From Tubulanus polymorphus (Eukaryota > Animalia > Nemertea), in the NCBI RefSeq assembly GCF_964204645.1, contig NC_134033.1:5790231-5854230 (forward strand): a stretch of DNA of 64,000 bases, read 5' to 3'. The stretch's first letter is position 1; each line of letters begins with the position of its first letter. Of the stretch, positions 20,896 through 48,070 are shown piece by piece. The position numbers were made by a program, and so were the translations under genes. The notes beneath the pieces were generated by a model, which was not told the origin of the DNA, searched no databases, and saw nothing but the letters and a program-made list of their open reading frames with translations.

Positions 20896-21781
20896 TACTT
20901 ATACGTCGATTCCGTGCCTAAGCCGAATGAGGGAATGGGGAACCGGCACACCAGCTATCCCGTCAGATGCCGCCACTAAGATATCAGATAAATAAGCTAA
21001 TGTGTTTTCTTTTTCTATGAAACAAATTAACTTTTACTTAAAATTAAACGAAATCGATGAAAATTAGTTCTCAGTTTTAGTTCGATCGTCCAACGAAAAA
21101 ATTAGGCAAATCAAGCGTCAAAATAAACTCTGATTAGTATTTAGAATTCATATTTGGCTCGATGTCCATACATCATGTATAGAATTTGAGACATCATTGT
21201 TAGATTTTAAAGTAGTTTGAGAAGATCTCAAGCGGTGACAAAAGTGACACCTGGTGGTTTATGGTGGAAGTTCGCTTGTAGCCAACGCGGTGCCCACTAC
21301 TGTCGAAAGCGGGGATTCCACGTTGCTTCGCCAGTGGTTATTGCACAACAGTTTACGTATTCTACATTTCAATTAAATCTTACTCAACTTGTCTTTTTAG
21401 TAAACTGACGTTTAGTTCAATCTATACCATACACTGTGAGGAACCGAATCTAACATCTATTCGATAACTCGGTTGGTAGTATACGAATTCTGAAGCCTAA
21501 AAAACCAGTTTGTTCGCAAATGGGCTAATTTTGGCTACAATAACGTTTGAGTTCTGAGATGACTAGCATTGTCCCGCTTGATTCCAAAGGCGTCTATGAG
21601 GTTGGCTGTTAAGGTGCTTAATAGATATACAATGATTAAAGAGATTAAGAATTCCCCTGGAAAAAATCAACTTCTACATCTTTTTCGTCTATAGTTCGAG
21701 AGGTTCAAGTTTTATTCGTCTGAATTGACTAAACTACATTTTGATTGGTCATAATACTAAAGGCGCGAGGATGGTTATCGA

Positions 21782-24700
21782 CTAATCGCATCTACCGAAA
21801 AGACGGTCACGCGGGCAGTTTCTCGACACTGTTTCGATGCCTCTCTGGTCGGTACCCGGGCTGCATTGATGAACCGGGTTGATACGAAGTCTGGTGTCCC
21901 GCTTGCAGAATCTGCTTCGTGTTGAGACGCAGTCGGTGTTGCATGGAGTCCAAGGCGTCCATGGGGACATGTTGCCGAGTGAGCCCACTATAAAGACATT
22001 ATTAAATTCCTAGTTAGCTAATGAATAGAACATAATGAGGCAATCTACCGTGGGTTCTGCTGAGGACCGACCAGGTGCTGCATGTGTGCAATAGGACATT
22101 AACTGCATCAAAAGATGATTCATTCCCTTTGTGGCAAGTGAGGATCCACCAAGCGTCACTAGTGTGCAGTGGGGCATCAACTACTGCCGCGGCAATAGAG
22201 GATTGTACTTGTGGCAATTGGGGATGTATCCAGGTGTCGCTAGTGCGCAGTAGGACATGAACTTATGTTTCAATAGAAGATTCGACTTGTAGCGTGAGGA
22301 TCCACCATGTGTCACTAGTGTGCAGTAGGACATTAATTACCATGGCAATGGAGAATTCCACTTTTGGCAAGTGGGGAAGCATCAAGGTGTCAGATTCAAA
22401 ATAAAATCAGCATTGGTGGGATATGATAGTAACCACTTACAGTTTTCGGAGCATCCGTACAGTTGGTTGATACCCACAAGTTCCGCTACGCTCAATTCAT
22501 CTAGTAAAAAGAATAAAAGATTATTTCTTTTTTGCACGTGGCAATATATATTGATTGTGGAAATAATCTTTGTCCATTAATTCGCTTAACTCTATGCAGT
22601 AGGATAAGATTGGCCTCAGCAGAATTCGCAACGAGTTGACTCGAATTAAGATTCGGTATTTCGAACTTTTCTAAGAAGTTCATTTACGTATAGATATAAT
22701 ATGGGCCTACTTGATATTGATTTTGAAATCAATTAATAATTTGAATAAAATGTACATGATAGAAATTGGAACTTGATTAACAGAGCGGTACAATTAGCGT
22801 GGACGTTTTGCAACTTGAAAAAATTGAGATTTTTAAGTAAAATAATGATCGAATAAGTTTGAGTGTGAATAAAGTCTTAAATCAGTATGAACGATCATTT
22901 CCTTGTGAAAAAGGTTTCAATTGATTATCAATGTAGATATGTACATCAAATCCGGAGTCAATTCGATAAGAGATTCGTCCATACTCAAAACTTAGACCTA
23001 TCGGATTAACACTTTCTCGCCGCGGATTAACGTTAATACGGGGTGATGTCTTTAAATTTCGAATGGATTCTAAGATTAGTATTGCTTACCTCTGGTGATG
23101 TAATCTCGAGTAAGATGGACGTATTTGTCTGCGTTAAGTTGGCTCTGCGCGTCAGTGAATCCTTCATGAAAAACAAAACAGAACTTTCTCTAGACGCCAA
23201 CACGACGAGTGTACAGTCTTCGTTATGACCTAAATGGCCTCAGAGTGACTGAGTTCCATCATAGGGCTGAATTCACATACGCTTGCTAAGCGCAGATAGG
23301 AAACTGAACTAGAAGTAAGATTACGAGTTATTCTAGGGGGCCAACAATATTGGTAACCTCTCCCCATAAACATATAACTTCGTTAATAGATTGATAGCAT
23401 ACATGGTTCAGAGGGTGCTTTGAAATTCAGTGAAATGCTGACGATCGTCGCTTTTCTGGTGAGCTTTTTTCAACATGATTTCGATCTTCAATATATCAAG
23501 TCTTGTTAAATGATTCTAACTATATATATCCACTTAATATAGTGACGGTGACACTAGCAACTGCTTACGAAAATGGCCAGAGTGCGTAATGAGAATCGAA
23601 GTGTACATGAGTGTAAACCTATCAGTGGACGACATTATAACGTATACACAGGAACTTCTCGGAACTTATTACTTTTGAATAGGTCGGTTTCCTAACTATT
23701 TCCGGTTGTGCCTTTAGGCCGCGCTTAAAGTTCTTTCATAACTTGTTTCTTTTCAAATTACGAATTCTAGAATGTATGTATTTTTTTATTATCAAAACCA
23801 TCCAGCCTATGAGATGTAGTGCATTTAAACGACTGTAAGACTGCACTAGATCGTGCCGATAAAGATCAAGCAACCAGGTTTGGCAGTAGTTCGCCATTAC
23901 GATGGAAATTATGTTATGAGGTCATGTCAGCTGATAGCTGACCTCGACGGGAGCAATCGGAATACACATTGTTATCTGTTAAATAACCTGGACGATGGTC
24001 TTGGAATTTAAAAGGTTTTCGATACCGATTTGGCCCTAGAACTTTCCAGATAATAAATTTCAAAGCACCCAGTCCGTTGGAAACGTACCAAGCGCATGCG
24101 TGACGGCGTGAATGACGATTCCTTTGAACGCGCAGTCGGCTCCGAGCGAAACAACTTGGGCTCCTTCATCGTCGGCTTTTCCAACGTGAGTGGCGCATCT
24201 GAAAACAATCATTTTGAAAAATTCATTCTCAACAAATTTTTTGACAGCGAAAGCTAAATGAAAAATTCCTTATTGCATTACACTGTTCATAAATATAGTT
24301 CCACAGTTCACAATTTAAGTTTGTTCATTTCATTTCCTCAACCCAGAGTAAAATCTTAACTAATTTACACAATTCAGACATCGTAATTCGTTCATAATTT
24401 CGATGAAGGTGTTCTCGAATTTATCAGAATTTAAATCTTTTATTTAGATCGTAACCGAACTTTATGAACTAGGAGTCATTGATACGTCGATGCAGGTAAG
24501 TTAACGAACCCGACTCCATTGGCGAATTTCAACCAGTTCGAGTCCTTCTTTTTGCTTCGTCGGAATTCCACGCAGGTTTTCTCTGAAAGTTCTTCCATTG
24601 TGGCTTTGATCATTTTCTTCACCTCTACACACGATAAATAAACCACGCGTTTATCAACGAACTCAATCAGCCCAATTGTAGTGTAGTGAATGAGGTTCAC

Positions 24701-25692
24701 AGGTAGTCTTATATCACAGGACTGGTCGTTAGTTATAAAGTTGATTATAAAACCAAAATAATCTTAGACTGTCCTTCAGTTAGATTGGCTATAGAACTAA
24801 AATAAAGCTTAGACTGGTTTTGAACCAATCTAACACAAATTTAAACTGCTATTGTTTATAAAACAAAGAAAAGAGCTTAGACTGGTTTTGTATATTAAGC
24901 TGTCAGGTAAGCTCTAGAACTTATATGAGCTTAAACGCGACCGATACTGGTTGTTAGATTGGTACGTAATAGAACCGAAATGAGCTTTACTCTAAATTTG
25001 TTACATCTGCCATAGAATCAAAAGTGTAGACTGTTGGTTGTTAGATTGGTCATATATAAAACTGGTTCTATATAGACTGTATTCATATTAGTTGTCAGAT
25101 TAGCAATAGAACTAATGAACTTAGACTGATCTTAGATTGTTGGACTGGTTAAAACCAAGATAGGTTTAAACTGGTCTTATGTTTGTAGATTGGATATCGA
25201 ACTTACAGAGTGGACTGGATTTTAGAAATCCGCCTTACCATCCACAAGTCCACGTCAACAATGAGGACAACTTTTGAAAACATGTCCAACTCGGTTAAAG
25301 CATGTACTTACGTTTGTCGAGAGAACTGTCAAATTCAAACGGGATGGAGCCCTTGTTCCATAGTTGTGACTGAGAAACGCGGAATGAGCGTTGGGCTGAT
25401 TACAAAAAGTAGACAAATAATCGTTAGGTACAAAAACAGTTTTTCAAAATCCAAATTGGAAAATAGCCAACCACTAGTTTCCATAAGTCCCCTTATGACA
25501 TCACTATTTACAAAATCTCTAAATCAAATATCGAAATGCTACTTAGCCCGATGATGTCATTTGGGGATTTTATGAACGAAGACGATTTTTAGCGGGCCGG
25601 ACGGTACCTCTTGTGAAATGCGCAGAAGCAACCAATTCAAACAAGGCGATAATCGACGCTGCTACCAGCAATGTTGAGATACTAAACTTCAT
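21782..25692 (-). CDS. Secreted astacin-like pseudoprotease + TSP1 domain, copy A (243 aa)
   Basis: Seven phase-consistent GT-AG exons: 25692-25608 (signal peptide MKFSISTLLVAASIIALFELVASA), 25395-25312 (QLWNKGSIPFEFD), 24624-24510 (IKATMEELSEKTCVEF), 24198-24089 (GCATHVG..QVVSLGADCAFKGIVIHAVTHAL), 23161-23090 (GFTDAQSQLNADKYV), 22500-22441 (LSVAELVGINQLYGC), 21987-21782 (SPWTPWTPC..C..TRSRFC, TSP1). An extra in-frame ATG is at 25695; a non-coding first exon ends at 26128. Confidence 0.9.
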
Positions 25693-26127
25693 CATTGGAG
25701 ATTTCGTATCTGAATCAAAAGAATACCATTAATGAGAAGAGCTGTTTTATTGTTCGAGGCTGGTTTCAAATTAAACTGAAAACATGTAGGCCTAGTCACT
25801 ATAACTTATAGAAAGCTCGCTGCTAATGCATTTTGTATAGCTTCATTAGGTAAACGAGTAGAGTTCATAGATATCTGAAACTGATACCCCTACTTATCAT
25901 CGGGCCAACTCGGGAGTATTCTTATTTTACAAGTATCACAACCGTTTATAGCAAACGTATGTTTTTCTGCTTTTTGTATTTGCCAACTAGCTCTAGCATA
26001 TGTAGAACCCATTAATCCCATTAATTTAAATTTGATTTTTTCGAAATGCTTGCCAAATACTTTGATCAACTTTTCCGAGTATGGCAGTATTTACCAATTT
26101 GTGTTGTGTATTTGCATGCATTCTTAC

Positions 26128-26510
26128 CTTGTCAAGTCCTTTGAGTCCAGAGCATGAGATAATCGTGGTTAGATTTGGCTGCGGTTATATACAAAATGCC
26201 ATCCATCCTAACATCTGGCATGGATATCCGGTCATCAACTTCCGGTCATTTGCGTGTATCGTTATCCGGTAATTTACTTCCGCTAAGTAGCGGCTGCCTC
26301 GCGGCATTCTTTGTCAATCGAATCGATTTTCCTTATAGGGATAAACAGGATTTTAAAACGTCGAAAAGAAATATGTAATGCGTGTCGCGCATGATGTCTG
26401 GATGGTGATCAATACGACGCGGAACACCAGCTTCGGCGGAAACTTTGACATCTGTCATTATTAATTTATTGTCGATTCAGTTAATATTGGCGACTGCGAT
26501 CACGTGGTCA
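26128..26510 (-). promoter_or_regulatory. Promoter and non-coding first exon of pseudo-astacin copy A
   Basis: TATATAA at 26191-26185, about 55 nt before donor AAG|GTAAGA; CCGGAAGT 26245-26238; GCGGAAGT 26283-26276; CACGTG 26501-26506; all conserved in copy B. Confidence 0.65.
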
Positions 26511-28511: not shown

Positions 28512-29531
28512 ATGAAAGGGATCATGAACGCTACCGACATCGCCGCCACTCGCTGTCGATATTCGTCGAAGAGCGCCGTCTGGCTGGTCGTTCTCGCCTA
28601 CGTGTCGACGCCCGTCTGCGCGGTCGGCTTCGCGATGAACGCTCTCAGTTTCGTCGTGCTCAGGCGTCACCGGTCGCGTTCGAACGCTCTGCACCTGCTG
28701 CGACTGTTGGCCGTCGTCGACAACTGTTTCCTGGCGGTGTCCGTGTCGCTGGTGAACGCGCGGCGATTCTACGCGTATTTCAAGCACGCGTCCGAGTTCT
28801 TCTACCTGCCGGACGCGTTCGTCGGGCCGAGGTTCATCGTCTACCTGGCGCCGCCGCATCTGATCCTGCGCATGTTCCGCAACTGGTTGATCGTGTTGAT
28901 CAGCGTCGATCGAGCAATGCACGTCGTCGCGCCGTTGAAGTCGATCGTTCTGTGCAGTCGGAATCGCGTCAACACTGCGGTGGTAGCGATCGCCGCGTTG
29001 AGCGTCGCGATGCACGTGTTCAGATACTGTTGCCGACCGTTGACGATGGAGAAGCCCGACTGCTCGATCGACGACGGGATTCCGTTGCCGATGTTGCGGT
29101 TCCGTAACGATATACCGCGCGTGGTTGACGTGGTCACTTTAAGCGCGTTCGTCATCGTGATACCGTTCTGCCTCCTCGGCGCCACAAACACGATCCTATC
29201 CGTTCGTCTGTTCGCGGCGCGCGCTAAAAGACGGACGATGACCTCGGTCGCGGACGGCGCTAAAAAGACCGGCGGCGCCGATCAAGAACTGCAAGCGACC
29301 TTGCTGGCGTTCGGTATCGTCGTGACGTTTTTGGTTTGCGAAAGCCCGAACAGCGTGGAGCGCATCGTCGAGGCGGTTTTCTACGGCGGTAAGAAATTGC
29401 GCACGCATCCGATGATACAGGTGCTCATACAGTTGGATTCGTGCGTGAACTTCATCGTGTATTCGATGACCAGTCGTAAATTCCGCGTGGTGACCGGGCA
29501 GGTGGTGACTTGTTCGAAAACGCCGCAGTAG
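28512..29531 (+). CDS. Intronless rhodopsin-class GPCR, FMRFamide-receptor-like (339 aa)
   Basis: Seven hydrophobic segments; GFAMN (TM1), LAVVD (TM2), RNWLIVLISVDR (TM3), FLVCESP (TM6), DSCVNFIVY..SRKFR (TM7). Confidence 0.93.
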   Translation: MKGIMNATDIAATRCRYSSKSAVWLVVLAYVSTPVCAVGFAMNALSFVVLRRHRSRSNALHLLRLLAVVDNCFLAVSVSLVNARRFYAYFKHASEFFYLPDAFVGPRFIVYLAPPHLILRMFRNWLIVLISVDRAMHVVAPLKSIVLCSRNRVNTAVVAIAALSVAMHVFRYCCRPLTMEKPDCSIDDGIPLPMLRFRNDIPRVVDVVTLSAFVIVIPFCLLGATNTILSVRLFAARAKRRTMTSVADGAKKTGGADQELQATLLAFGIVVTFLVCESPNSVERIVEAVFYGGKKLRTHPMIQVLIQLDSCVNFIVYSMTSRKFRVVTGQVVTCSKTPQ

Positions 29532-31311
29532 TCGACGGATCTGGCTGACTGAAAGGCGAATCTATTCCGTCAAATCAAATTCGGTTAATTTTGATTGTAT
29601 TGGTCTTGGCATAATCAAATATGGTACAGTTTTTGTTTTTAATTTAACGTGGCTTCAAATTCAAATTGATTTGTCAAACGACCTTCGTATGCGATGTGAT
29701 TCGATTTAAAGATGGCGGACTCGCGGTTTTTTTTCACACGAGAGTTTTGCACTTTTCTTGTTAGCAGTGGACATGATCCTGTTTTCGTAAACCGTGGTAT
29801 CATATCAATTGAACGTCTCCAGTGTTACCATATTGAGAAACCTCCCTGTCCAAGCTCAAATTGTCGAAAAATGATCAAAACTCAAATTAAAACTAGTACC
29901 CATCGTAAAAGAGGAGATATGCTAAAAACCAAGGGCAGTATTTTCTGTTAAACTTTTTTGAACAAATCGTCAAATATATTTTTTTTGCAAATATGACTAG
30001 ATTAGATTACACACGTGACAAGTAAATTATGATTAGGATCAATTCGAATCTGATTTGACAGGATAAATTCGCCTCATACTATTTGAAATTAAATACCACT
30101 CCTTTCAGAGTTGAACCACAACCACAAGTTGCGAAACACAGTCAACCGCCGATACACCGCCCGCCCATGTACCGCCAACCCCGACTACAGCCAGGTTATC
30201 TCGATGTACATCTCAATACAAATACATAGTAAAACACCCCGGAGATTACGCCATACTCGCTATACCGCCAAAACCGCTCGCGCCGATTTGGGTGGTATAT
30301 CGGGCATCCCTAAAACGCGATTTGTCGAGTTCGTTTTGAGTTACATAACTGTACTCGATGAACAAAGCATATGAAAACATTTATTTGGTTCTTTGCTCAA
30401 TCTAACCAACAACTTCCCGAAACGGTATCAATTTTAACGCAGTATATGTTTTCAAGTAACTAGTTCCGAACGAAATTCTAAAATAACTTTAAATGGGAAA
30501 ATTTAGCTTACTCTGAATATTTGTTCTAAATGAATATGTCCCCCGAACGCTTGCGTATGTATAAGCAGGTTTGAAGCCGCCATCGATTTGAAGCGAGGGT
30601 TGACGGTATCGCGGTACACCGATACAAAACTCGTTTAATTTTCAATTTTTAGACGTTATGTTCAATTAATTTAATCTAACTTTGTTCGTCGAACATATTT
30701 GAATAATGTATGCATGAACGTATTTTGATCATCGGCAAGAAATTAGCGAACGTAACAAGTGATTTTAACTATCGAAAACGAAAATTAAACGGATCGGAAA
30801 TTCATGTTTCCCCCGAGGACGTTGTTCGTTAGATTTATGAATGTTTCTATGACGAGTCGATGCGCTTCACACCCGAAATAACATCTACATATGAAAACGC
30901 AGGTTGACTGAGGGATAGATTGAAACAAAGCTTTATTTCGCAAAACGATAATACACAATCATCATAGAGGTTTACACGAACGTTATTTTTGCAATTATAA
31001 TGATCATACTAAATTGTTAAAATTGCACATACGAACGTAGTAAGAGCCTCCCAAACCCCATCACCACCTACTGCGCACGAGTCTCCTATTATGTATAAGT
31101 CAATATTGAAGTTATACTACAGTTTTCTTAATCATATCTGACGAATTAGAAGATGTAGATTTCGAAGAAGAAAAAAAATCGAAATGTGTATAACAGCTGA
31201 ATTATTAACTTTTTTGGTATCATTTCATGACTCGAAAATGTTGACAGCGTTTTATCTTCAAATAGTTAAAAACATAATCTCGTTTATTTCAAATTTCTGC
31301 AATCGATATGT

Positions 31312-31356
31312 TTCTCGACATTTCGGCTAAATACTATTAGCCATCATCAGGCGTAC
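31312..31356 (-). ncRNA. Degenerate minimal hammerhead-ribozyme-like motif (Penelope-type)
   Basis: Minus strand reads CTGATGA-T-GGCTAA-TAGTAT-TTAGCC-GAAA-TGTC; near-identical motif on the plus strand at ~56193-56240. Confidence 0.45.
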
Positions 31357-31462
31357 TGAACGTTGCGTTTGATTACACTTTCCATGATTGTACTATGCAC
31401 ATATCTTGACTATTGTTAACTTCAAACCCTTCACAATAAATTGATCAGTAGAAAATACATGA

Positions 31463-33044
31463 TTACAAAACTTTCAGGTTTCTGAATCTAGACTGATCTT
31501 TATAGATGATTTCATCAGTGGCTTGTTGCCATTTATCGACTGCAATCAGATCTGTATTATATAAACGACATTTGACGATGTTATTTTGTCTTTTGATGAC
31601 AAACAAATCACAATCGCGATTCATAAGACATTTCGAAGCGCACAGAATTTCATACGCTGTTCTTGTGACCGGTTCGAGTGTGTTGATGTCAGGCGAAGGT
31701 AGATTCTTTGACGCGGTATCCATAACAAAATCTACAAAATATTCGCCAACATTGAAACTAACGGTAGATTTTTTTGCAAAAATAAAGTAGCTCTCCACCG
31801 GCAAATATATAAAAAACAAACAATGGAAATGTTAAATTCAACTTTTTCTTATATATTTTGAGTCTTAGGGATATATAGAATAAAGTATGAACACTTTCCA
31901 GCACTTCGAAGATTTTACCTAATCGAAAGCTTACCGAAATCTTTCTGAAAATACGGTACATTTTAGAATCAAAATTGCTTAAGTCGACTCTAAGCTGTAC
32001 CATATAGGCGCTTTTCCGAATTTAACCCGGCGCTCGCTACGGAGCCTGCGATTAGACCGAATATTCGGGTAAAACAGGCGGGGTTTACATACCTAACTCA
32101 TCTACACGTTCGCAGTACCATTCCACATAGTCATACTCTGTCCATACTTTGAACAAATCAGGCCGAGTGAATCTATTTTCGGGCAGAATATAACAGAATT
32201 TTGATGGTCGGTGATAGTGAGACGATCTACAGAGAAACTCTGTATGCTTCCCGCATGTATTCATACACTGTCTTAGAGTAGGAGCCGTGACGCCATTTAT
32301 ATCTGGTCCCAATCCCATCCCTACGAAAATGTTCCATCGCAGCCTTTGCCGGGGTCCACATGTGTCTAGAAAGAAATCATTGGAAAACATTTTTCGATTT
32401 CGAAGAGGCAGTAAAATAAATCGTGGTGAAATCTGACGACACACGTGATCAATATTGTCATCTAACTTAAAAGTAAATTCATAACTTTCTTATCAAGCGG
32501 CGCGCTAAATCAATATATTACATGTTATGAATATAAAGATGCATTTCTATTGAAATACTTAAAACGTAGGAAGTTCCTTCGAAGGGCCATTGAACGTTTG
32601 AATTTCACAATAAGATCTATGTCATGTTCAGGCTCTTGTTCCGATATCTTAACTCGACTGACATCTTGTGTATTTCAGATGGTAGTCTAAAGACGGCGGA
32701 ATAGGAGATAGTAAATAAGTTGTTGATATTAGTTGTCAAATGATAGTTCCTCTCGGACCAGGTCTGTATAACTGCGATGGATAAATAGATCTGTAGACTA
32801 TACTGGAACCAGTTCCAAAGTTGCGATTAAAGATTTGACTCAGAGTTAACTCATCGTAAGTGAACTAATTCTAACTCAGAGTTAACTCTATAACTCATGA
32901 GTGTCGAACTGGATCCTGTCTTAGATTTAAACTTACTTTAAAATTGACCGCACATAATCAATTAGTAAGTCTCTTACCGATCGCTTGTTCGGCTCCACTG
33001 AGAAAACTGGAGTTTAAAATCAAAATCACGCACAAAACCAACAT
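31463..33044 (-). CDS. Secreted double PAN/apple-domain protein, copy 1 (202 aa)
   Basis: Exons 33044-32978 (MLVLCVILILNSSFLSGAEQAI, signal peptide), 32365-32093 (TLRQCMNTC..FLCRSSHY..FCYI..YDYVEWYC) and 31731-31463 (ILCASKCLMNRDCDLF..KCRLY); all junctions phase 1 GT-AG. Confidence 0.82.
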
Positions 33045-33550: not shown

Positions 33551-35134
33551 TTACAAAACTTTCAGGTTTCTGAATCTAGACTGATCTTTATAGATGATTT
33601 CATCAGTGGCTTGTTGCCATTTATCGACTGCAATCAGATCTGTATTATATAAACGACATTTGACGATGTTATTTTGTCTTTTGATGACAAACAAATCACA
33701 ATCGCGATTCATAAGACATTTCGAAGCGCACAGAATTTCATACGCTGTTCTTGTGACCGGTTCGAGTGTGTTGATGTCAGGCGAAGGTAGATTCTTTGAC
33801 GCGGTATCCATAACAAAATCTACAAAATATTCGCCAACATTGAAACTAACGGTAGATTTTTTTGCAAAAATAAAGTAGCTCTCCACCGGCAAATATATAA
33901 AAAACAAACAATGGAAATGTTAAATTCAACTTTTTCTTATATATTTTGAGTCTTAGGGATATATAGAATAAAGTATGAACACTTTCCAGCACTTCGAAGA
34001 TTTTACCTAATCGAAAGCTTACCGAAATCTTTCTGAAAATACGGTACATTTTAGAATCAAAATTGCTTAAGTCGACTCTAAGCTGTACCATATAGGCGCT
34101 TTTCCGAATTTAACCCGGCGCTCGCTACGGAGCCTGCGATTAGACCGAATATTCGGGTAAAACAGGCGGGGTTTACATACCTAACTCATCTACACGTTCG
34201 CAGTACCATTCCACATAGTCATACTCTGTCCATACTTTGAACAAATCAGGCCGAGTGAATCTATTTTCGGGCAGAATATAACAGAATTTTGATGGTCGGT
34301 GATAGTGAGACGATCTACAGAGAAACTCTGTATGCTTCCCGCATGTATTCATACACTGTCTTAGAGTAGGAGCCGTGACGCCATTTATATCTGGTCCCAA
34401 TCCCATCCCTACGAAAATGTTCCATCGCAGCCTTTGCCGGGGTCCACATGTGTCTAGAAAGAAATCATTGGAAAACATTTTTCGATTTCGAAGAGGCAGT
34501 AAAATAAATCGTGGTGAAATCTGACGACACACGTGATCAATATTGTCATCTAACTTAAAAGTAAATTCATAACTTTCTTATCAAGCGGCGCGCTAAATCA
34601 ATATATTACATGTTATGAATATAAAGATGCATTTCTATTGAAATACTTAAAACGTAGGAAGTTCCTTCGAAGGGCCATTGAACGTTTGAATTTCACAATA
34701 AGATCTATGTCATGTTCAGGCTCTTGTTCCGATATCTTAACTCGACTGACATCTTGTGTATTTCAGATGGTAGTCTAAAGACGGCGGAATAGGAGATAGT
34801 AAATAAGTTGTTGATATTAGTTGTCAAATGATAGTTCCTCTCGGACCAGGTCTGTATAACTGCGATGGATAAATAGATCTGTAGACTATACTGGAACCAG
34901 TTCCAAAGTTGCGATTAAAGATTTGACTCAGAGTTAACTCATCGTAAGTGAACTAATTCTAACTCAGAGAGTTAACTCTATAACTCATGAGTGTCGAACT
35001 GGATCCTGTATTAGATTTAAACTTACTTTAAAATTGACCGCACATAATCAATTAGTAAGTCTCTTACCGATCGCTTGTTCGGCTCCACTGAGAAAACTGG
35101 AGTTTAAAATCAAAATCACGCACAAAACCAACAT
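33551..35134 (-). CDS. Secreted double PAN/apple-domain protein, copy 2
   Basis: Exons 35134-35068, 34453-34181 and 33819-33551; coding sequence appears identical to copy 1. Confidence 0.8.
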
Positions 35135-36179
35135 TATGACAATCTCTATGCGTGGTATCCGATCACAAGTTTTATTTCGACTGATTTGTAGCCTGTTAGT
35201 GTTTTATTGATAAAACCGACCAGAGCAATATCATTAATGAAATCGTTGATGCTGTACGATTAGCAGATTCGTCACGCCTCAAAACGCTGAGTGTTTTTAG
35301 CAATTACTTTCGTAATAAACATCACAGCGACCGGCGCAGCCTAGAGATCATCGACACGGTCCATGTGATGAATGGTTTTTTAAACCAATCAACAATACCA
35401 ACAGATGAAAATTGAAATAAAAAATGCGTGAATAACCAAATTTGTAATGTCGATCATGGAAGAATAATTTTTCGAAATTTGGGAATTCAATGACGACAAT
35501 GATAATAATGTTGTGTCTTATTTAGCGTTAAATCAAGGGAAGCTGCTCAGAGCGCTTTACTTTCCAGTATCTTTATTTCCAGCCTGTAAACTCTGACCTT
35601 TTATCGGTCATCTCTCCCTGGAGATGTAACATCCGAGCAACTAGTCACCAGTTTCGAGGATCTTATTCTTAGCATTGGTCAATTTCACTATACACGCGCG
35701 TTAATGTCCAAACGCAGTATGCGATTTGGTGAGTTGAATCAAAAAAGTGTTTTGTCAATTAAAAAGATATATTTTCAAACTAAATCGATTGAGGCAAAAG
35801 ATATATCAAATAACTCAATAAGGGGTCAACGAAGTGGCCTCGGGGAATATTTACCAGATTGATAGCCTGTCGGGGATCCCACTCAGTCGTCTAACCTATT
35901 CTTCCAGTCGGAATGAAAACATGTAGAACTAATAGAATTGTTGTCTTTTTTCCAGATCAGTCGTTCCTCACCGACCCGATCGATACCAACGACGTGTGGC
36001 TGACTAAACTAACACACTTTCGACGAAAGACCTTTCGAAATTCATGACGCATCAAACAGAGGTTAGTGGTGAGTAGATGTGTTCTTATTTGATACTGGAT
36101 CTAACTGACTATACAATGTATATGTATCGAGTCAAATTGAAAATTGATGGCGGTCTTCGTGTTTTCTTCAGATTTCTTC

Positions 36180-36345: not shown

Positions 36346-37028
36346 TGCGCTATTACCGAATATATTGGCCCGACGGATGTTAGTATGCTTGGATAATCAC
36401 ATCTTCCAATGATTAATATCTGATTGAAATCATCCATCATAAGCTCCACTCATGAATTGGTAAGTTAACTATATATATGGTTTGGGTTAGTCGGGCTTAG
36501 TATGTGTTAAACAGATGGATCCTCGTTACAGCAAACTCGAAATGGTCTTAGTCATAGGTGATTTTTTTAGTAAAGAAAGCTTCAAATTCATTGGGTGCAA
36601 TGGTTCTAAAATTAGTATTTGGGTTTAACGATTTGGGTTGACAATTCGATATACAACGAATTATGAAGCGTCTAAATAGATAACCATCTTTCGGATGAAG
36701 CAAACCTTTAATTGATACCATCAAAAAATATTGTTTTTCAATGTGAAGAGCGGTGTGGCCGAGTATTTTGAGCGCTCAACTCTCGGTGGCCAGGTCGAGG
36801 GTTAGAACCCCATACATTACCGTAGGCTATGGAGTGTACGAAAGCTTTAGCGGAGGGCCTCGAATATCTTTTTGCTCCGGTTTTAATGCAGATACAACGA
36901 TGGAAATCTGAGAATACATTGAAATGTTCAACTTAAATCTATAGTTTTAGAAGTTCAAACTTTATTCCCTAAATTCGACTAAACTACATTTTACGAAGTC
37001 ATAATACAAACACGGGGTTGGGTGTCGA

Positions 37029-40000
37029 CTAATCGCATCTACCGAAAAGACGGTCACGCGGGCAGTTTCTCGACACTGTTTCGATGCCTCTCTGGTCGGT
37101 ACCCGGGCTGCATTGATGAATCGGGTTGATGCGGAGTCTGGTGTCTCGCTTGCAGAATCTGCTTCGTGTGGAAACGCAGTCGGAATTGCACGGAGTCCAA
37201 GGCGTCCATGGGGACATGTTGCCGAGTGAGCCCACTATATAAGACATATTGAAATTCCTGATTAGCTCATTTATAACACATAATTAGGCTATCTACTGTG
37301 GCTATCGAGGGTTTTACTTATGTAAAGTGAGAATCCACTAGACGTACTAGTGTGCATAAAATGCTGCTCTGGCAATGTAGGATTTCGCTAAGTGACAGAT
37401 GAGAAGTAGAACATCAGTTACTCTGGCAATAGAGGATTCTAATTGTGGCAAGCGAGGAACCACCAGGTGTCACTAGTACGCAATATGATATCATTTCCTG
37501 AATTCTTTTCAGATTCGATTAAAATTTATCGAAATTCGCTTTTCATCAAATTCATTGAACGAACTGTAAACATTGTGACTTATATGACTCAAATATGTCA
37601 AAATGAAGTAATTGCCTGAAATTTGAAAATCCGAATGGAAGAATTTCATTTTGACTGAATATGTACGTCCTGGCATTCGAGCCACCATCTACAGGGTAAA
37701 ACAGTTACAACTTACAGTTTTCAGAGCATCCATACAGCTGGTTGATACCAACAAGTTCCGCTACGCTCAATTCATCTAGTTAAAAGAAAAAAATGTTCTT
37801 TAAAATAAAAGGTATACATCAAAATATATGATGGCATATAATTCAAATCAGCTTCAGCAGAAATGGCAACGAAACGAATCGAATTGGGATTTCGTATTTC
37901 GAATTTCGTCGTAGAAATGTATGTAGATGAGACATTCATGATGATCATTTTGGCATCAATTAATTAATTCCTTACTTAAATACATGATTGAAATAGGAAA
38001 TTGATGATAGAAATGTGATTCCGTACAATCAGTACGGAAGTTCAGGCCCGTTGAGAAAAAGGTAGATCAACGCTTATACTGAGTAACCTATTTTTATCGC
38101 GTTTCGACTATCGTTTAAGATGAATGTTAGTTGAGTACTGCTTACCTCTGGTGATGTAATCTCGAGTAAGATGAACGTATTTGTCTACGTTAGGTTTGCT
38201 CTGCGCGTCAGTGAATCCTTCATGAAAAACAAAACAAAGAAAATCATTTTCTAGACGCCAACACGACGAGTCGTTTTTATTACGTATGAGATTCTGGATC
38301 CAGATCCAACATAGGGCTGAATTCACGAAAGCTTGCAAAGCGCAGACAGGAAACTAAACTTACTGCCTTCTAAACATCGGCAATTAACTAAGCTTAATGG
38401 TTATTTTAGGGGGCCTACAATATTGGTCACCTCTTCCCATGAACATACTTCATAAGAAAATGATAGCATACATGGTTCATCGGGGGCTTTGAAATTCAGT
38501 GAAACGCTGACGATGGTCGCCTTTCTGGTGAGCTTTTCAACATGATTTCGATATTTAAGTCAAGTTGTTAAATGATTTAAACTGCCAAATATCGACCTGT
38601 GACACGACCAACTAGTGGCGAGAATGGCCAACTGTGTCATTAAGATATGTCATTAAGGTAGTTGAGTCCAAACCTCTCCCTCGATGACCTTAACGGTATA
38701 CGGGAGCTTTTGAAAACTTTTTCACTTTTGAATATATGTGTTCCACTTTTGAATATATGTGTATTTTTCAGAACGGGTTATATAATCTTTTGAATGACGA
38801 AGTCAGAGTGTAATGAATATATTATTCAAATCATCCACTCCAGACCTACGAGTTGTAGTCGGTGTAATGAAACGACTGTATGACAGCATTGGAGATGATA
38901 AAGCTCAATGAGACACACAATCTAATAGAAATCAGGTTATGAGGTCATGGCCTCGACGGAAACAATTGGATAACGTCGTCAGCTGTCAGATGACCTGGAC
39001 GACGGAAGAGCTTAAAATCTAGAACTTGCTAAATGATATTGGCTTGCCGCAGGTGCTTCATACGCCTAAATTTATGAAATAATATTGCCTACCCTTATAT
39101 TTATATTGATTCATATCATTGATGCAATGAAAATATATATTTACAGATTTCAAGCAACTTCTATCTTGTACACGTACCTAGCGCATGCGTAACGGCATGA
39201 ATGACGATTCCTTTGAACGCGCAGTCGGCTCCGAGTGAAACTACTTGGGCTCCTTCCTCGTCGGCTTTTCCCACGTGAGTGGCGCATCTAAAAATAACGA
39301 ATTTCATTTCTCATTTTATCAAATCTTATTCTACAACAACTTGACAAGTATGCTGCGAATAGAGATTTCATAAGATAATTATTTCAAAATTAAGCATGAA
39401 GAATACGTTCACGAAATAGATTTCGTTTTAGATTATATTGGTTTAAGTAGCTAGTTCAACCGTTTCAGGGGTTACGTTTCAGTCAAAAGTTAAAGTTTAT
39501 TTATTCTTATGCTTTAAACCAAACCGATCTATTAAAATCTAGAAAACTAGTTTGTTCGCAGTTCGATAAAAATGTTCTCGGAATTTAATGCAAATCTTGG
39601 AAAAAATTTTCTATCCAAATTGAAACCAGCCTTTATGATTCGTAGGTTTAGGTAAGTTAACGAACCCAACTCCGTTGGAGAATTTCAACCAGCTCGAGTC
39701 CTTCTTTTTGCTTCGTCGGAATTTCACGCAGGTTTTCTCTGTAAGTTCTTCCATTGAAGCCTTGATCATTTTCTTCACATCTAGACACGAAAAAATAAAC
39801 CACACGTTCGTTAACAAATTCATTCAGCTCAGTTGTACCGTAGTGAATGAAGTTTATGAGCAATCTTATAACCTAGGGACTGGTCGTAAGATATTGGATT
39901 GAGAACCAAAACAATCTTAGATTTTTCTTAAGTTGTAAGATTGATTATACAACCAAAATGACCTTAGACTGGTCTCAAGTTGTGAGATTTTGGAACTAAA

Positions 40001-40841
40001 ATGAGTTTAGACCTGTCTTACGTTGTTCGATTAGCTATAGATCCAGAAATGAGCATAGTTAACTGGTCTTAAGTTGTTAGATTGGATATCGAACTAGAAT
40101 GAGATTTGACTGGTCTTTAAAATTGTTGGATTTTTCATAGAACCAACATAAGTTTGCACAGCTGTTGTTAGATTAGTTCGATTTAGGTTCGATACTTAAA
40201 TGAGCTTCGACCAGTTTGGAGTTGTGAGATTAGCTATAGAACAAGGGTGGTACTAGACCAGTTCTAAACCAGAACATTGAGGACTGTCCTTAAACCGAGA
40301 CCATTGAGTGGCCAAAAAGGCCTTAAAGTTTTAAATCGACCGATTTCATCTATCATATTGATTTGAAGACTTAATATTCAGTTTCCTGAAATGTAGTTCC
40401 TCGTAACTTTGTTGGTTCAGTTTGAATTAAAGAGTGAACTTACTTTTGTCGAGAGAACTGTCAAATTCAAACGGGACGGAGCCCTTGTTCCATAGTTGTG
40501 ACTGAGAAACGCGGAATGAGCGTTCAGCTGATTACAATAAAAATAAACAAATTATCTCTAGGTACAAAAGACTGTTACAGTTTTTCTAAAGACAAAATGG
40601 AAAATAGCCAACCGCTCGTCTCATTTAAGCCCCCCTATGACATCACAATTCGTAACGTTTCAATATACATTTCAAATATCGAAAGGCTTATTTTAACCAG
40701 ATGATGTCATATGGGGATTTATCGGGACAGAGTTCTGTAAGCCGGCGGGTCGGTACCTCTAGGAAAATGGGCAGAAGCAACCGATTCAATAATGGCGATA
40801 GTCGCCACCGCTACCAGCAATACCGAAATACTAAACTTCAT
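37029..40841 (-). CDS. Secreted astacin-like pseudoprotease + TSP1 domain, copy B (243 aa)
   Basis: Exons 40841-40757, 40527-40444, 39780-39666, 39287-39178, 38217-38146, 37775-37716 and 37234-37029; lengths (85, 84, 115, 110, 72, 60, 206) and phases match copy A; same HAVTHALGFTDA motif; non-coding exon ends at 41341. Confidence 0.9.
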
Positions 40842-41340
40842 ATTTGTAGACTTTTGTGACTGAAAATAAAGAATACCTTTCATCAAAATATGTTGTTCAG
40901 CAGCTGAGTGAAAGATCATTTCAAGTTAAACTTTAAAACAGAGATATAGTACGTAGTTACTTTCAATGACTATACTAACTATACTAACACTGACTATAAA
41001 CCAAATTACGACGAGCTACAAGAGCGTAGCAGCTTCATCGGGAAAGTCAGGAGAGTTCACGTTAGATATCATCAATATTATTTTGAATATTCATCTCAAT
41101 CTGAAATCCCAAGTAATCTCTCGTCTGGCCAACTCATAATTTATATAAGTACCACATATGTTACAGCCAGCCGTTTCTCATATTTCTTATTTGGCAAATA
41201 TCAAGCTTATACATATAAATATATATATATATATAAATATCTGAGCTTATACAGAATCCATTAAAATCGATGTACAGAGCTTGTTCTCAAATTTCAGATA
41301 TTGTTGAATGATATTTTTGTATATTTTGATATTTTCTTAC

Positions 41341-41700
41341 CTTGTTAACGCAAACTCCTTCGATTCCAGAGCATGGGTTAATCGTGGTTAGATTTGGCTG
41401 CGGTTATATACAAAATTCCATCCATCCTAACAGCTGCGCGGATATCCGGTCATCAACTTCCGGTCATTCACGTGCATCGTGATCAGAGAATTTACTTCCG
41501 GTATGTAACGGCTGCCTCGCGGCATTCTTTGTTTATCGAATCGATTTTCCGTATCGGGATAAACAGGATCATACTTATCCCCTCGTGACGTTATTGTGTC
41601 AATATGACACGAAATTCCGGGCTCGATGGAAACATTTACATCTGTCATCGTAGATTCTTATCGATTCAGTAAACATGATGGCGACGTGATCACGTGGTAC
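41341..41700 (-). promoter_or_regulatory. Promoter and non-coding first exon of pseudo-astacin copy B
   Basis: TATATAA 41410-41404; CCGGAAGT at 41463-41456 and 41501-41494; CACGTG 41691-41696; alignable to 26128-26510. Confidence 0.65.
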
Positions 41701-45949: not shown

Positions 45950-48070
45950 AATACAGAAAAGGAATAAAGCATCAAAAAGTAATACAATGTTTACAAATTA
46001 TGTAACTTTACAACAGAAAAGGATATTAAAGCATCATCTTATATAAAATTACCACTTACAACAAAAGCAGTAATAAATGTTCAAAATGAAGATAATAAAT
46101 GTTTTCTATGGTCAATTATTAGTTGTTTACACCCAACTCAGGAAAATGTTTGTAGAATAACAGATTATCGGAAATATGAAACATTATATAAAATTGATCA
46201 ATATCCAGTAACTATAAAGATGATTCCTAAAATAGAAAAAAGTTGATAATTTAAAAATAAATGTATTCGAATTAATGCAATTACAAAAGGTGAGACAAAA
46301 GGTGAAAATATTAAAGATTATACATTAGGAGCCTTACATTTTACAGAATATTATGATGATGAAAATGTAATAGATTTATAATATTACGAAAAGATGAAAA
46401 TAAACATTATATGTGGTTAAAACAAATAGATTTATTCTTTAGAACAGAAAATGATTTCAACAGTCATAACAAAATATATTTATGTAGCAAATGTTTATCT
46501 AAATTTAGAACTGAAAATGCGTTACTAAAGCATAAAGAATCATGTGATAATAAAGATTTTTGCAAATTAATAATGCCAACAGAAAAAGATTATAAATTGA
46601 AATTTACTAATTATAAATTTAGAAATATAGTGCCATTTGTAATTTATGGGGATTTTGAATCGTTGAATAAAGAATTAACTGGTCAAGATAGAAACGAAAT
46701 ATATAACAAAAAGCAATTTTTAAAATCAATGGACAAAGGAAATGAATTAAGACATAATTCAAGACCCACCAATCATAAATACAATTTAAAAAGTTCATCG
46801 AAGAGCTGCAGCTTATTATAAATACAATTATATTGTTCATAATAGAATGTAAAAATTTTATCTAAAACTCTAAAACAAGGAATGAAATTAAAGAAATTAC
46901 ATATATATATTGAATTTAATCAATCGAAGTCGTTAGAAAAATATATAGATTTCAATACTCAACAGAGAATGATATCTAAAACAGATTTTGAAAAAGATTT
47001 TTTTAAATTAATGAATAAAAGTTTTTATGGAAAAACATGTGAAAATATTAGAAATAGAAATGATATTGAATTATTAGATAATTCTGTACGATTGAGACAT
47101 TTACAATCAAGTCCTAGACATTTAGAAAATAAAAGATTTGAAGATTATTTAACAGCAATAAAATAAAAAGAACGTCAATGAAATTTAATGAACCAATATT
47201 TATAGGTTCGACTGTTTTAGAAATATCAAAATTGTTAATGTATGATTTTTATTATAATGTTTTACAACCACTTAATTGGGAAAAGCATATTGAAATATTA
47301 CATTTTGATTCTGTAACAGCTGACACCACAATATTATTAAAATATAATAATCAAATGTTAACTAGTAGAATTTTAGAAATAATACCTAATCATAATAAAC
47401 TTTATATTACATATGGTGAAAAGGAATTAATACAAATAAATGGATTAATATATGTTTGAGCAAAAAATGGATGGAAAACATTAATTTAAGAATATTATTA
47501 GACGTAAAACGAATAAGACGATTTATAGAGTTAGAACTAAATTAGAGTTTGTAGATGTTACTGAAGATCACAATTTAATTAAACGAAATGGTGATGAAAT
47601 AAAACCAACTGATATGAAAATTGGAGATGAATTATTACATAAAAGATTTTATCCAAGAATGAATCATATGTAATTTGATGAAATAATAGATAATATTTAT
47701 AACATAGAACCAGAAACATTAGAATAAAAAGAATATTTTATCAAAGGATTTTTTTATGGGTGATGGTTCAGCAGGTGTCAATAATTATGTTGGTGGCAAT
47801 AAATATTGTTGGTATTTATGCAATCAAGATTTGAAATTATTTGAAAGAATAAAAAAATACTGTGAAGTTTTTCCAAATAAAGTTTTTAAACTCATTGATA
47901 TTATGAAATCAGCAGCAGTTTATAGAATACTTGTGAATAATCCTAAAGATTTTGCATTTAAATATAATGATGAATTCTATAACTATGCACTAGTCAAAAG
48001 TAATACTTCAACCAAAGAAAAGATAGTGCCAGATTATGTATTAAATGCAAAATATAATTTAAGGATTTAA
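45950..48070 (+). mobile_element. polB: Decayed Polinton/Maverick-type (endogenous virus-like) protein-primed DNA polymerase B with intein
   Basis: Very AT-rich. Fragments QNEDNKCFLWSIISCLHP, CSKCL..LLKHKESC, PFVIYGDFESL (ExoI), EKDFFKLMNKSFYGKTCENIRNR (motif B), PIFIGSTVLEISKLLMYDFYY and ILHFD (start of motif C); stops, frameshifts and a large internal deletion near 46830. Confidence 0.88.
47310..48070 (+). other. Intein with LAGLIDADG homing endonuclease (degraded, C-terminus lost)
   Basis: Block A SVTADTTILLK directly after HFD; block B FVDVTEDHNL..IKPTDMKIGDELLH (47551-47640); LAGLIDADG-type YFIKGFF(frameshift)MGDGS at ~47735-47770; KEKIVPDYVLNA. Confidence 0.82.

What the first reader, a model, noticed from the sequence alone, without database searches (positions are those of the whole stretch)
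21782..25692. Conserved, catalytically dead 'half-astacin'-TSP1 secreted protein
Known: astacins use HEXXHXXGFXHEXXRXDRD, a Met-turn (SXMHY) and a propeptide with an FXGD switch. Seen: the motif reads HAVTHALGFTDAQSQLNAD, so the catalytic Glu is Ala, the third His is Asp and the family Glu is Ala. The Met-turn segment is missing exactly between two phase-1 junctions (..YITR|DELS..INQLYGC). The propeptide is only a few residues ending in RAQR (RAER in copy B). All four astacin cysteines and a TSP1 domain remain. Copy B has the same lesions with synonymous changes (CAC/CAT, GTC/GTT), identical exon sizes and diverged introns. Inference: purifying selection on a non-proteolytic protein such as a decoy, binding/adhesion factor or secretion component, possibly still metal-binding through H/H/D.
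Basis: partly seen in the sequence, partly recalled or inferred. Interest (0 to 1): 0.82.

Follow-up and report, generated by a model that had tools for sequence, protein, structure and literature searches.

The report
Dead half-astacin gene family, ribbon worm
A ribbon worm keeps four intact copies of a secreted protein descended from an astacin protease that has lost its catalytic residues, its pro-peptide and the lower half of the enzyme, yet is still held by selection, so it most likely binds rather than cuts.

Summary
Gene A (21782-25692, minus strand) and copy B (37029-40841) are seven-exon, all GT-AG, 732-nt genes. Each encodes a 243-aa secreted astacin-like protein with HAVTHALGFTD in place of HExxHxxGFxHE, no Met-turn and a TSP1-like tail.

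New here:
- The genome is Tubulanus polymorphus.
- Two more intact copies (C, D) and one wrecked copy (E) lie about 600 kb upstream. The scan had already flagged C and D there (s1-500240).
- dN/dS among A-D is 0.09-0.26. Exons are 91-99% identical against 56-86% for introns.
- A full-length active-type paralogue (P1), 58 kb away, has the same exon sizes and phases. Against P1, the family differs by two in-frame 5' exon truncations: 63 nt (pro-peptide) and 153 nt (Met-turn and lower subdomain).
- RefSeq models independently use the same exon 2-7 junctions.
- The predicted fold is the astacin upper subdomain plus the C-terminal helix.
- No relative was found outside this species.

Verdict: a real, selected, non-proteolytic astacin derivative. 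It is a new variant of a known kind (pseudoprotease) and of moderate interest.

The parts
25608..25692 (-). Gene A exon 1 (85 nt): start codon and signal peptide, ending ..VASA then HFTR. A second in-frame ATG lies at 25695-25693.
   Evidence: It has the same 85-nt size and phase 1 as exon 1 of copies B-D and of paralogue P1. The RefSeq model of A skips it.
25312..25395 (-). Gene A exon 2 (84 nt): the RAQR site followed by the mature N-terminal strand (..LWNKGSIPFEFD..).
   Evidence: P1's homologous exon is 147 nt and carries a pro-peptide with LLEGDI, so this exon is 63 nt shorter at its 5' end.
24510..24624 (-). Gene A exon 3 (115 nt): helix A and the first conserved Cys.
   Evidence: Pfam Astacin positions 20-53 of 189, E 4.8e-4. 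Same 115-nt size as in P1.
24089..24198 (-). Gene A exon 4 (110 nt): edge strand, two Cys, and active-site helix with HAVTHALG.
   Evidence: Pfam Astacin positions 57-90, E 6.8e-7, 29.6 bits. Only four copies exist in the genome; the next best hit is 39% identical.
23090..23161 (-). Gene A exon 5 (72 nt): FTDAQSQLNAD..YITR, the degenerate remainder of the zinc-site consensus.
   Evidence: It aligns residue for residue with P1's 72-nt exon encoding FYHEQSRTDRD...
22441..22500 (-). Gene A exon 6 (60 nt): C-terminal helix of the astacin domain with the fourth Cys (..INQLYGC).
   Evidence: It is homologous to only the last ~18 codons of P1's 213-nt exon 6, which also holds SLMHY.
21782..21987 (-). 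Gene A exon 7 (206 nt): TSP1-like six-Cys module (WTPWTPC..) and stop codon.
   Evidence: Pfam is sub-threshold. phmmer matches TSP1 arrays. The nearest ESM Atlas clusters are all TSP1. The exon is 96-99% identical among copies.
21711..21716 (-). AATAAA polyadenylation-type signal 66 nt after the stop of gene A.
   Evidence: It sits in a sequence block conserved downstream of all four copies.
26104..26351 (-). Conserved block upstream of gene A, a candidate promoter or 5' non-coding exon.
   Evidence: 78-85% identical to blocks 440-900 nt upstream of the ATG of B, C and D. An acceptor-like TTTCAG lies ~15 nt before the ATG in all copies. Its function was not tested.
37029..40841 (-). Copy B, whole gene. 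Exons 40841-40757, 40527-40444, 39780-39666, 39287-39178, 38217-38146, 37775-37716, 37234-37029.
   Evidence: RefSeq XP_074657295.1 (P0001) covers exons 4-7 with the same junctions.
36961..36966 (-). AATAAA signal 63 nt after the stop of copy B.
41317..41569 (-). Conserved upstream block of copy B.

Best explanation
These are functional genes of a Tubulanus polymorphus-specific family of secreted pseudo-astacins. There are four intact copies: A and B in this window, and C and D about 600 kb upstream.

Origin. The family descends from an ordinary pro-astacin gene of the local subfamily in which several members carry a TSP1-like tail. It differs from the nearest full-length paralogue by two in-frame 5' truncations of exons. 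One removed the Asp-switch pro-peptide. The other removed the Met-turn, the Tyr ligand and nearly all of the lower subdomain. The remaining zinc-site consensus also lost the general-base Glu, the third His and the family Glu.

What is left. The protein keeps the complete upper subdomain: the five-stranded sheet with the substrate-binding edge strand, helix A, and the former active-site helix. It also keeps a short linker, the C-terminal helix tied back by the conserved disulfide pair, and a TSP1-like module.

Inferred mechanism. It cannot hydrolyse peptides. It is secreted and probably trimmed at RAQR/RAER. It probably acts by binding, with the astacin remnant and/or the TSP1-like tail engaging matrix, mucus or astacin partners. 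One possibility is a decoy or adaptor among the worm's more than 100 astacin loci.

Shown: gene structure, lesions, copy number, selection, ancestry and predicted fold. Inferred: secretion, processing, loss of activity. Not shown: expression, partners, metal binding.
For: - Gene models with canonical splice sites and identical exon sizes in four copies.
- dN/dS of 0.09-0.26 across all six pairs; no bootstrap replicate reached 1 in the five pairs bootstrapped.
- A 13:6:36 bias of variable sites by codon position.
- Exons 91-99% identical against introns 56-86%, except in the near-identical pair B/D.
- A conserved AATAAA signal and a conserved upstream block.
- Copy E, by contrast, has a stop at codon 6, a destroyed exon-2 acceptor and exons 3-6 replaced.
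- Paralogue P1 has exon sizes 85/147/115/113/72/213 with the same phases, against 85/84/115/110/72/60 here. P1 has LLEGDI, HEIMHAIGFYHEQSRTDRD and SLMHY.
- Pfam Astacin scores 52 bits on P0001 but covers only profile positions 57-117.
- In alignment A4 the four Cys and the two His are invariant, and nearly invariant E95, H104, E105, R108, D110 and R111 are replaced.
- The AlphaFold model has pLDDT 85-94 for the upper subdomain and 78-87 for the C-terminal helix. Its best PDB matches are astacins (1AST, E 2e-10).
- The ESM Atlas's own alignment-free model superposes on astacin domains at TM 0.82-0.87 over residues 29-175.
- RefSeq XP_074657292.1 uses exactly the same exons 2-7.
Against:
- The two RefSeq models have inconsistent 5' ends and omit the signal-peptide exon. 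C and D have no protein model in the databases searched. This suggests weak transcript support.
- No orthologue was found in another species, so conservation rests on paralogues, which gene conversion can homogenise. Against that, conversion would not produce the excess of synonymous change.
- Residues 101-125 of the model are low confidence, and the TSP1-like tail did not fold.
- The model was built from an astacin alignment and leans towards that fold.
Confidence: 0.72

Rival explanations
1. The copies are unexpressed relics: young pseudogenes that have not yet accumulated disabling mutations, kept alike by gene conversion.
For: There is no RNA evidence. RefSeq gives only two partial or odd models and none for C and D. 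One family member (E) is clearly dead. B and D are about 98% identical even in introns.
Against: A differs from B, C and D by dS of about 0.2 and by 20-44% in introns. Even so, it keeps every splice site, every exon length and an open frame, with dN/dS of 0.19-0.26. Conversion would homogenise introns too, but they are far more diverged than exons. The lesions are shared by all copies, so they predate divergence that has since run under constraint. The identity to the nearest active paralogue is only 38%, which argues for an old lineage.
Confidence: 0.1
2. The gene model is incomplete. Real transcripts include a further exon (or a different exon-6 acceptor) that supplies a Met-turn, so the protein is a full astacin domain with a mutated zinc site.
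For: There is no transcript data. Intron 5 of A is 589 nt and holds stop-free stretches of up to 67 codons.
Against: Intron 5 is only 58-60% identical between A and the others, with many indels not divisible by three. Its lengths are 589, 370, 380 and 367 nt. tblastn with P1's Met-turn exon finds nothing in the sense strand of any intron 5; the best hits (E about 0.09) are antisense. No MHY-type motif is shared among copies. The direct 5-to-6 junction keeps the frame in all four copies, and NCBI's pipeline chose it independently for A and B.
Confidence: 0.06
3. It is still a metalloprotease using a non-canonical site, with His/His/Asp zinc ligands as in HExxHxxGxxD enzymes.
For: H125, H129 and D135 are kept in all four copies. 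Asp as the third ligand exists in snapalysin-type metzincins (own knowledge, not tested here).
Against: The general-base Glu is Ala in all copies. The Met-turn, the Tyr and the primed-side half of the cleft are absent. The pro-peptide that keeps astacins latent is gone, which is consistent with nothing left to restrain.
Confidence: 0.02

Closest known systems
Astacin-family (MEROPS M12A) metallopeptidases, e.g. crayfish astacin (PDB 1AST) and nematode NAS proteins with TSP1 tails
   Same: Homologous: Pfam PF01400 scores above threshold. It has the four conserved Cys, the upper-subdomain fold, a signal peptide, a basic processing site at the position of the mature N-terminus, and a C-terminal TSP1-type module as in some NAS proteins.
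   Different: It has no general-base Glu, no third His, no family Glu, no Met-turn/Tyr and no Asp-switch pro-peptide. About 51 codons of the lower subdomain are missing. All 119 other-species and paralogous astacin hits retrieved keep HExxH.
Paralogue P1 in the same genome (G000 C9:5749579-5753680, locus L041), a canonical pro-astacin gene
   Same: It lies 58 kb from gene A. Exon sizes match for exons 1, 3 and 5, and all intron phases are the same. It is 38% identical over residues 1-159 of A.
   Different: P1 keeps the pro-peptide (LLEGDI), the full zinc consensus and SLMHY. No TSP1-like exon was found within about 11 kb downstream. Other subfamily members (L046-L050) do carry the tail.
ADAM pseudoproteases (ADAM11/22/23, UNC-71), M12B
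   Same: They are metzincin-derived extracellular proteins with substituted zinc ligands and general base, and they act through protein-protein binding (review PMC11266112).
   Different: According to that review they typically keep the Met-turn and an entire pseudoprotease domain. Here the Met-turn and its subdomain are deleted. That review lists no astacin pseudoprotease.
ADAMTS-like (ADAMTSL/papilin) proteins
   Same: They are secreted non-catalytic relatives of a metzincin-plus-TSP1 family that act in the matrix (own knowledge, not tested here).
   Different: They lack the protease domain altogether and carry many TSP1 repeats. This family keeps half of the catalytic domain and a single divergent TSP1-like module.

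Membership tests
Astacin (M12A) as an evolutionary family | Significant match to the Astacin profile (PF01400) | tested here: met
   P0001 (copy B exons 4-7) scores 52 bits against a cut-off of 22.5, E 9e-14, but matches only profile positions 57-117 of 189. Exon 3 matches positions 20-53 and exon 4 positions 57-90.
Astacin (M12A) as an evolutionary family | Four conserved cysteines forming the two astacin disulfides | tested here: met
   C43, C65, C86 and C141 (mature numbering) are invariant or nearly invariant columns in A4. Disulfide formation itself was not tested.
Astacin (M12A) as an evolutionary family | Astacin catalytic-domain fold | tested here: inconclusive
   The upper subdomain and C-terminal helix are predicted with confidence and match 1AST, BMP1 and meprins. 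The lower subdomain cannot exist, because about 51 codons are absent.
Active astacin peptidase | Zinc-binding consensus HExxHxxGFxHExxRxDRD | tested here: not met
   It reads HAVTHALGFTDAQSQLNAD in A; copy D has HAVIH. E95, H104, E105, R108, D110 and R111 are replaced.
Active astacin peptidase | Met-turn SxMHY with the Tyr zinc ligand | tested here: not met
   It is absent from the CDS and from intron 5 of all copies. It is present in P1 as SLMHY.
Active astacin peptidase | Pro-peptide with Asp switch (FxGD) | tested here: not met
   Only HFTRAQR/HFPRAER lies between the predicted signal cleavage site and the mature N-terminus. P1 has LLEGDI.
Active astacin peptidase | Peptidase activity | not testable with these tools
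   This needs recombinant protein.
Thrombospondin type-1 repeat | WxxWxxC start, Arg layer, six cysteines | tested here: met
   Direct reading of exon 7 shows WTPWTPC..TRSRFC.. and six Cys.
Thrombospondin type-1 repeat | Profile match at Pfam's threshold | tested here: not met
   TSP1_spondin E 0.19 and TSP_1 E 1.7. Tails of paralogues reach E 0.002-0.005 over the whole TSP_1 profile. phmmer finds TSP1 arrays, with P0002 at E 5e-22 summed over 12 repeats.
Thrombospondin type-1 repeat | TSP1 three-stranded fold | tested here: inconclusive
   My model has pLDDT 22-38 there. The Atlas model aligns to TSP1 repeats at TM 0.54-0.66, and the feature hits are all TSP1 but score below 0.9.
Pseudoenzyme (selected, non-catalytic enzyme homologue) | Catalytic residues lost while the coding sequence stays under purifying selection | tested here: met
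Pseudoenzyme (selected, non-catalytic enzyme homologue) | The gene is expressed as protein | not testable with these tools
No transcript-derived protein was found in the databases searched.

The most novel reading that the evidence does not exclude
The upper subdomain of a metzincin, clamped by the C-terminal helix and its disulfide, is an autonomous fold. Evolution has exapted it as a secreted binding module without any Met-turn. It may hold a metal through His/His/Asp. It would work as a decoy or adaptor that competes with the worm's very large set of active astacins for substrates, inhibitors or matrix sites, anchored by the TSP1-like tail. If so, it would be the first selected Met-turn-less metzincin derivative. 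It would also be a natural test of the claim that the Met-turn is structurally indispensable.
Probability: 0.25. Interest if true: 0.65.

Novelty: new variant of a known kind. Interest (0 to 1): 0.45.

Why it matters
Pseudoproteases are common, but the open-access literature searched here offers little on astacins. A review of metallopeptidase pseudoenzymes lists none from the astacins, and it notes that ADAM pseudoproteases keep the Met-turn (PMC11266112).

This family goes further than point substitutions. It has shed the pro-peptide and the whole Met-turn-bearing subdomain through two clean in-frame exon truncations, and selection still holds four copies. That gives three things:
- a natural minimal metzincin fragment on which to test what the Met-turn and lower subdomain are needed for;
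- a worked example of how exon-boundary shifts remodel an enzyme into a binding protein;
- a candidate regulator or matrix component in an animal whose genome holds more than 100 astacin loci, from a phylum whose mucus proteomes contain astacins (PMC11768458).

It also shows that the public annotation of these genes is incomplete: wrong 5' ends, and two copies with no protein model.

Tried and rejected
Exons were searched one by one by reference. Later I used the database's own proteins, P0006 and P0001. Exons were joined only inside sandbox scripts, from window.fa and fetched loci, for translation, dN/dS and local BLAST.
- The look-up of encoding contigs for P0001: nothing on record.
- Word-based protein searches with P0001 and P0006 returned only their own cluster.
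- The exhaustive search with exon 7 found no relative beyond generic TSP1 arrays.
- A search for a relic of the Met-turn or pro-peptide coding sequence in introns 5 and 1 found nothing credible.
- Two MAFFT alignments misplaced short fragments or the C-terminal half and were discarded (A1, A3).
- The full-length fold gave no usable model of the tail.
- No TSP1-like exon was found downstream of P1.
- Literature searches for astacin pseudoenzymes found only the general review.
- I did not build a paralogue tree, because the usable exon 3-4 region (about 75 residues) is too short.
- I did not census pseudo-astacins genome-wide, because the profile search under-samples degenerate copies: A-D themselves are not among the 150 rows listed of the 161 matches.
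Full report
**What is there.** Six-frame translation of the minus strand of 21700-25750 and placement of splice sites give a seven-exon gene. All introns are GT-AG, the CDS is 732 nt and the product 243 aa.

The product has these parts, in order:
- A typical signal peptide.
- Seven residues ending RAQR.
- An astacin-like sequence whose Trp lies ten residues after the RAQR site, as in mature astacin.
- The motif HAVTHALGFTDAQSQLNAD.
- A direct junction ..YITR|DELS...
- The C-terminal helix ..INQLYGC.
- A six-cysteine WTPWTPC.. module.

Copy B (37029-40841) has identical exon sizes and all-different intron lengths.

**Handling of the spliced model.** Exons were searched singly by reference. Joins were made only inside sandbox scripts. 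Once the database returned the public proteins P0001 and P0006, those ids were used instead.

**Organism and public annotation.** The names attached to the database hits identify the genome as Tubulanus polymorphus, a palaeonemertean ribbon worm.
- RefSeq XP_074657292.1 (P0006, 242 aa) is gene A. Its residues 29-242 are identical to residues 30-243 of my model, so NCBI's pipeline chose the same exons 2-7, including the Met-turn-less 5|6 junction.
- Its first exon lies at 26012-25930. That stretch is not conserved in B, C or D, and it skips the signal-peptide exon.
- XP_074657295.1 (P0001, 155 aa) is copy B from exon 4 onward, with a start codon inside intron 3.
- The signal-peptide exon is the better first coding exon. 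It is conserved in all copies and has the same 85-nt size and phase as exon 1 of the nearest full-length paralogue.

- A DNA search of the whole genome found three more copies on the same chromosome, about 600 kb upstream and on the other strand.
- C (C9:5197002-5201214) and D (C9:5206233-5210094) are intact, with the same seven exon sizes.
- E (C9:5218535-5222319) has a stop at codon 6 and an exon-2 acceptor changed from AG to GG.
- In E, exons 3-6 are replaced by sequence related to window 30550-31402 and 35468-35602.
- The first stage of the scan had already flagged C and D (s1-500240).
- The HAVTH-type exon 4 exists in just these four intact copies. The next best match in the genome is 39% identical.

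**Selection.**
- Nei-Gojobori dN/dS is 0.09-0.26 for the six pairs, and 0.08-0.20 without the signal peptide. No bootstrap replicate reached 1 in the five pairs bootstrapped.
- Variable sites in the mature region fall 13:6:36 on codon positions 1:2:3.
- A against the others is 91-97% identical in exons 2-7 but 56-80% in introns. B against C is 92-98% in exons against 79-86% in introns. B and D are about 98% identical throughout, so they are a recent duplicate.
- A conserved AATAAA signal follows each stop by 37-67 nt. A roughly 250-nt block 440-900 nt upstream of each ATG is 78-85% conserved.
- E shows that an unconstrained copy in this lineage does decay.

**Is an exon missing?**
- Intron 5 is 589, 370, 380 and 367 nt in A-D. 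Between A and the rest it is only 58-60% identical, with indels of many lengths.
- tblastn with the Met-turn exon of the nearest paralogue finds no sense-strand relic in it.
- No conserved open stretch or MHY-type motif is shared among copies.

Together with NCBI's identical junction, a hidden Met-turn exon is unlikely.

**Where it came from.** The genome gives at least 161 exon-level matches to the Astacin profile. One complete gene, P1 (L041, C9:5749579-5753680), lies 58 kb from gene A.
- Its exons are 85/147/115/113/72/213 nt with phases 1, 1, 2, 1, 1, 1. The family here has 85/84/115/110/72/60 with the same phases.
- P1 encodes a pro-peptide with LLEGDI, then ..SLKR before the mature N-terminus, HEIMHAIGFYHEQSRTDRD, and SLMHY.
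- It is 38% identical to A over residues 1-159 of A.

The family therefore differs from an ordinary pro-astacin gene by two in-frame losses at the 5' ends of exons. Exon 2 lost 63 nt, the pro-peptide. Exon 6 lost 153 nt, the Met-turn, Tyr and lower subdomain. Substitutions in the zinc consensus came on top.

But the downstream junction is new: in P1, and in paralogues L045 and L048, that stretch is a single exon.

Other members of the subfamily (L046-L050) carry the same short TSP1-like tail directly after ..LYxC, with the same exon junction. The tail is therefore inherited, not a novelty of the dead copies.

**Domains and fold.**
- Pfam Astacin is above threshold on P0001 but covers only profile positions 57-117.
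- In an alignment with 45 astacins from many phyla, the four Cys, both His, Gly101 and Phe102 are invariant. The nearly invariant Glu95, His104, Glu105, Arg108, Asp110 and Arg111 are replaced. A gap of about 55-60 residues spans the Met-turn region, and the sequence realigns at the C-terminal helix.
- AlphaFold2 on that alignment gives mean pLDDT 81.8. The upper subdomain scores 85-94, the C-terminal helix 78-87, and the linker (residues 101-125) 49-62.
- Foldseek's best matches are astacin, BMP1, meprins and hatching enzymes (1AST: E 2e-10, TM by query 0.65; BMP1: TM 0.76).
- The ESM Atlas's own alignment-free model superposes on astacin domains at TM 0.82-0.87.
- The tail is TSP1-like by its motif, by phmmer hits to TSP1 arrays and by the Atlas neighbours. 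It is below Pfam's threshold, and it did not fold confidently in my full-length model.

**Relatives elsewhere.**
- An exhaustive HMMER search of 1.84 billion representatives with exon 7 found only the protein's own cluster and generic TSP1 repeats.
- A profile-seeded word search found 877 astacins. The best outside the family scores 114 bits against 317 for the family's own cluster and is at most 37% identical. Every listed hit keeps HExxH.

So no orthologue is known. Nemertean sampling in these libraries is thin, so this absence is weak evidence.

**How it most likely works.** By established astacin structure (Bode and Stöcker's work, reviewed in PMC9848320; my own knowledge for the details), three points apply:
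- The upper subdomain supplies the edge strand that pairs with the non-primed side of substrates.
- The lower subdomain supplies the third His, the Met-turn base, the Tyr and the S1' pocket.
- The freed N-terminus salt-bridges to the family Glu.

Everything tied to catalysis and its control is gone here, and everything structural in the upper half is kept. The simplest reading is a secreted, non-proteolytic binding protein. Whether it binds matrix through the tail, peptides along the remnant cleft, or a metal through His/His/Asp is inference only.

**Literature.** A review of metallopeptidase pseudoenzymes lists ADAMs but no astacins, and it notes that ADAM pseudoproteases keep the Met-turn (PMC11266112). 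The main astacin review never uses the word 'inactive', and its two hits for 'pseudo' are only a spider species name. Astacin-like proteins occur in nemertean mucus proteomes (PMC11768458).

**Limits.**
- Earlier notes of this scan report several other zinc-less astacins in this genome. I did not check them. If true, pseudo-astacins are frequent here, which tempers the surprise.
- The distinctive point of this family is the loss of half the domain.

Noticed in passing
window 22122-22392 (intron 6 of gene A): A tandem array of ~75-81-bp units (3.5 copies, 70-74% matches). The same ~330-bp stretch matches dozens of places on contigs C6, C10 and C9 at 72-82% identity, so it is a dispersed satellite inserted in A's intron 6. 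It is absent from copies B-D.
   Followed up: partly
window 28512-29531 (+): A single-exon 339-aa ORF between genes A and B matches the rhodopsin-family 7TM receptor profile (PF00001, E 6e-9). It sits in a local GC peak (0.48).
   Followed up: partly
window 31463-32444 and 33551-34532 (-): A perfect tandem duplication with a 2088-bp offset: two ORF pairs have identical translations. One ORF of each pair is a PAN/apple domain (PF00024, E 1e-10).
   Followed up: partly
G000 C9:5218535-5222319 (locus L044): Pseudogene copy E keeps A-like exons 1-2 (about 95% identical, with a stop at codon 6 and the acceptor changed AG>GG) and an intact-looking exon 7. Its middle is replaced by sequence homologous to the A-B intergenic region of this window (30550-31402 and 35468-35602). 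With D ~98% like B and E ~95% like A, this fits an inverted segmental duplication of the B-A pair followed by rearrangement.
   Followed up: partly
window 25930-26012 (-) and 39288-39310 (-): The public RefSeq models look wrong at their 5' ends. XP_074657292.1 starts in a non-conserved upstream exon and skips the signal-peptide exon. XP_074657295.1 starts at an ATG inside intron 3. Copies C and D have no protein model in the searched collections.
   Followed up: yes
window 25693-25720, and the equivalent sites in B, C and D: An acceptor-like TTTCAG lies ~15 nt upstream of the start codon in all four copies, and a conserved ~250-nt block lies 440-900 nt upstream. This suggests a 5' non-coding exon and intron.
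   Followed up: no
G000 C9:5749579-5753680 (locus L041): An intact canonical pro-astacin gene (P1) lies 58 kb from gene A on the opposite strand. It is the closest full-length relative of the dead family. No TSP1-like exon was found within ~11 kb downstream of it.
   Followed up: yes
window 46001-48000: A sharp drop in G+C to 0.23 with strong positive GC and AT skew. I did not examine it.
   Followed up: no
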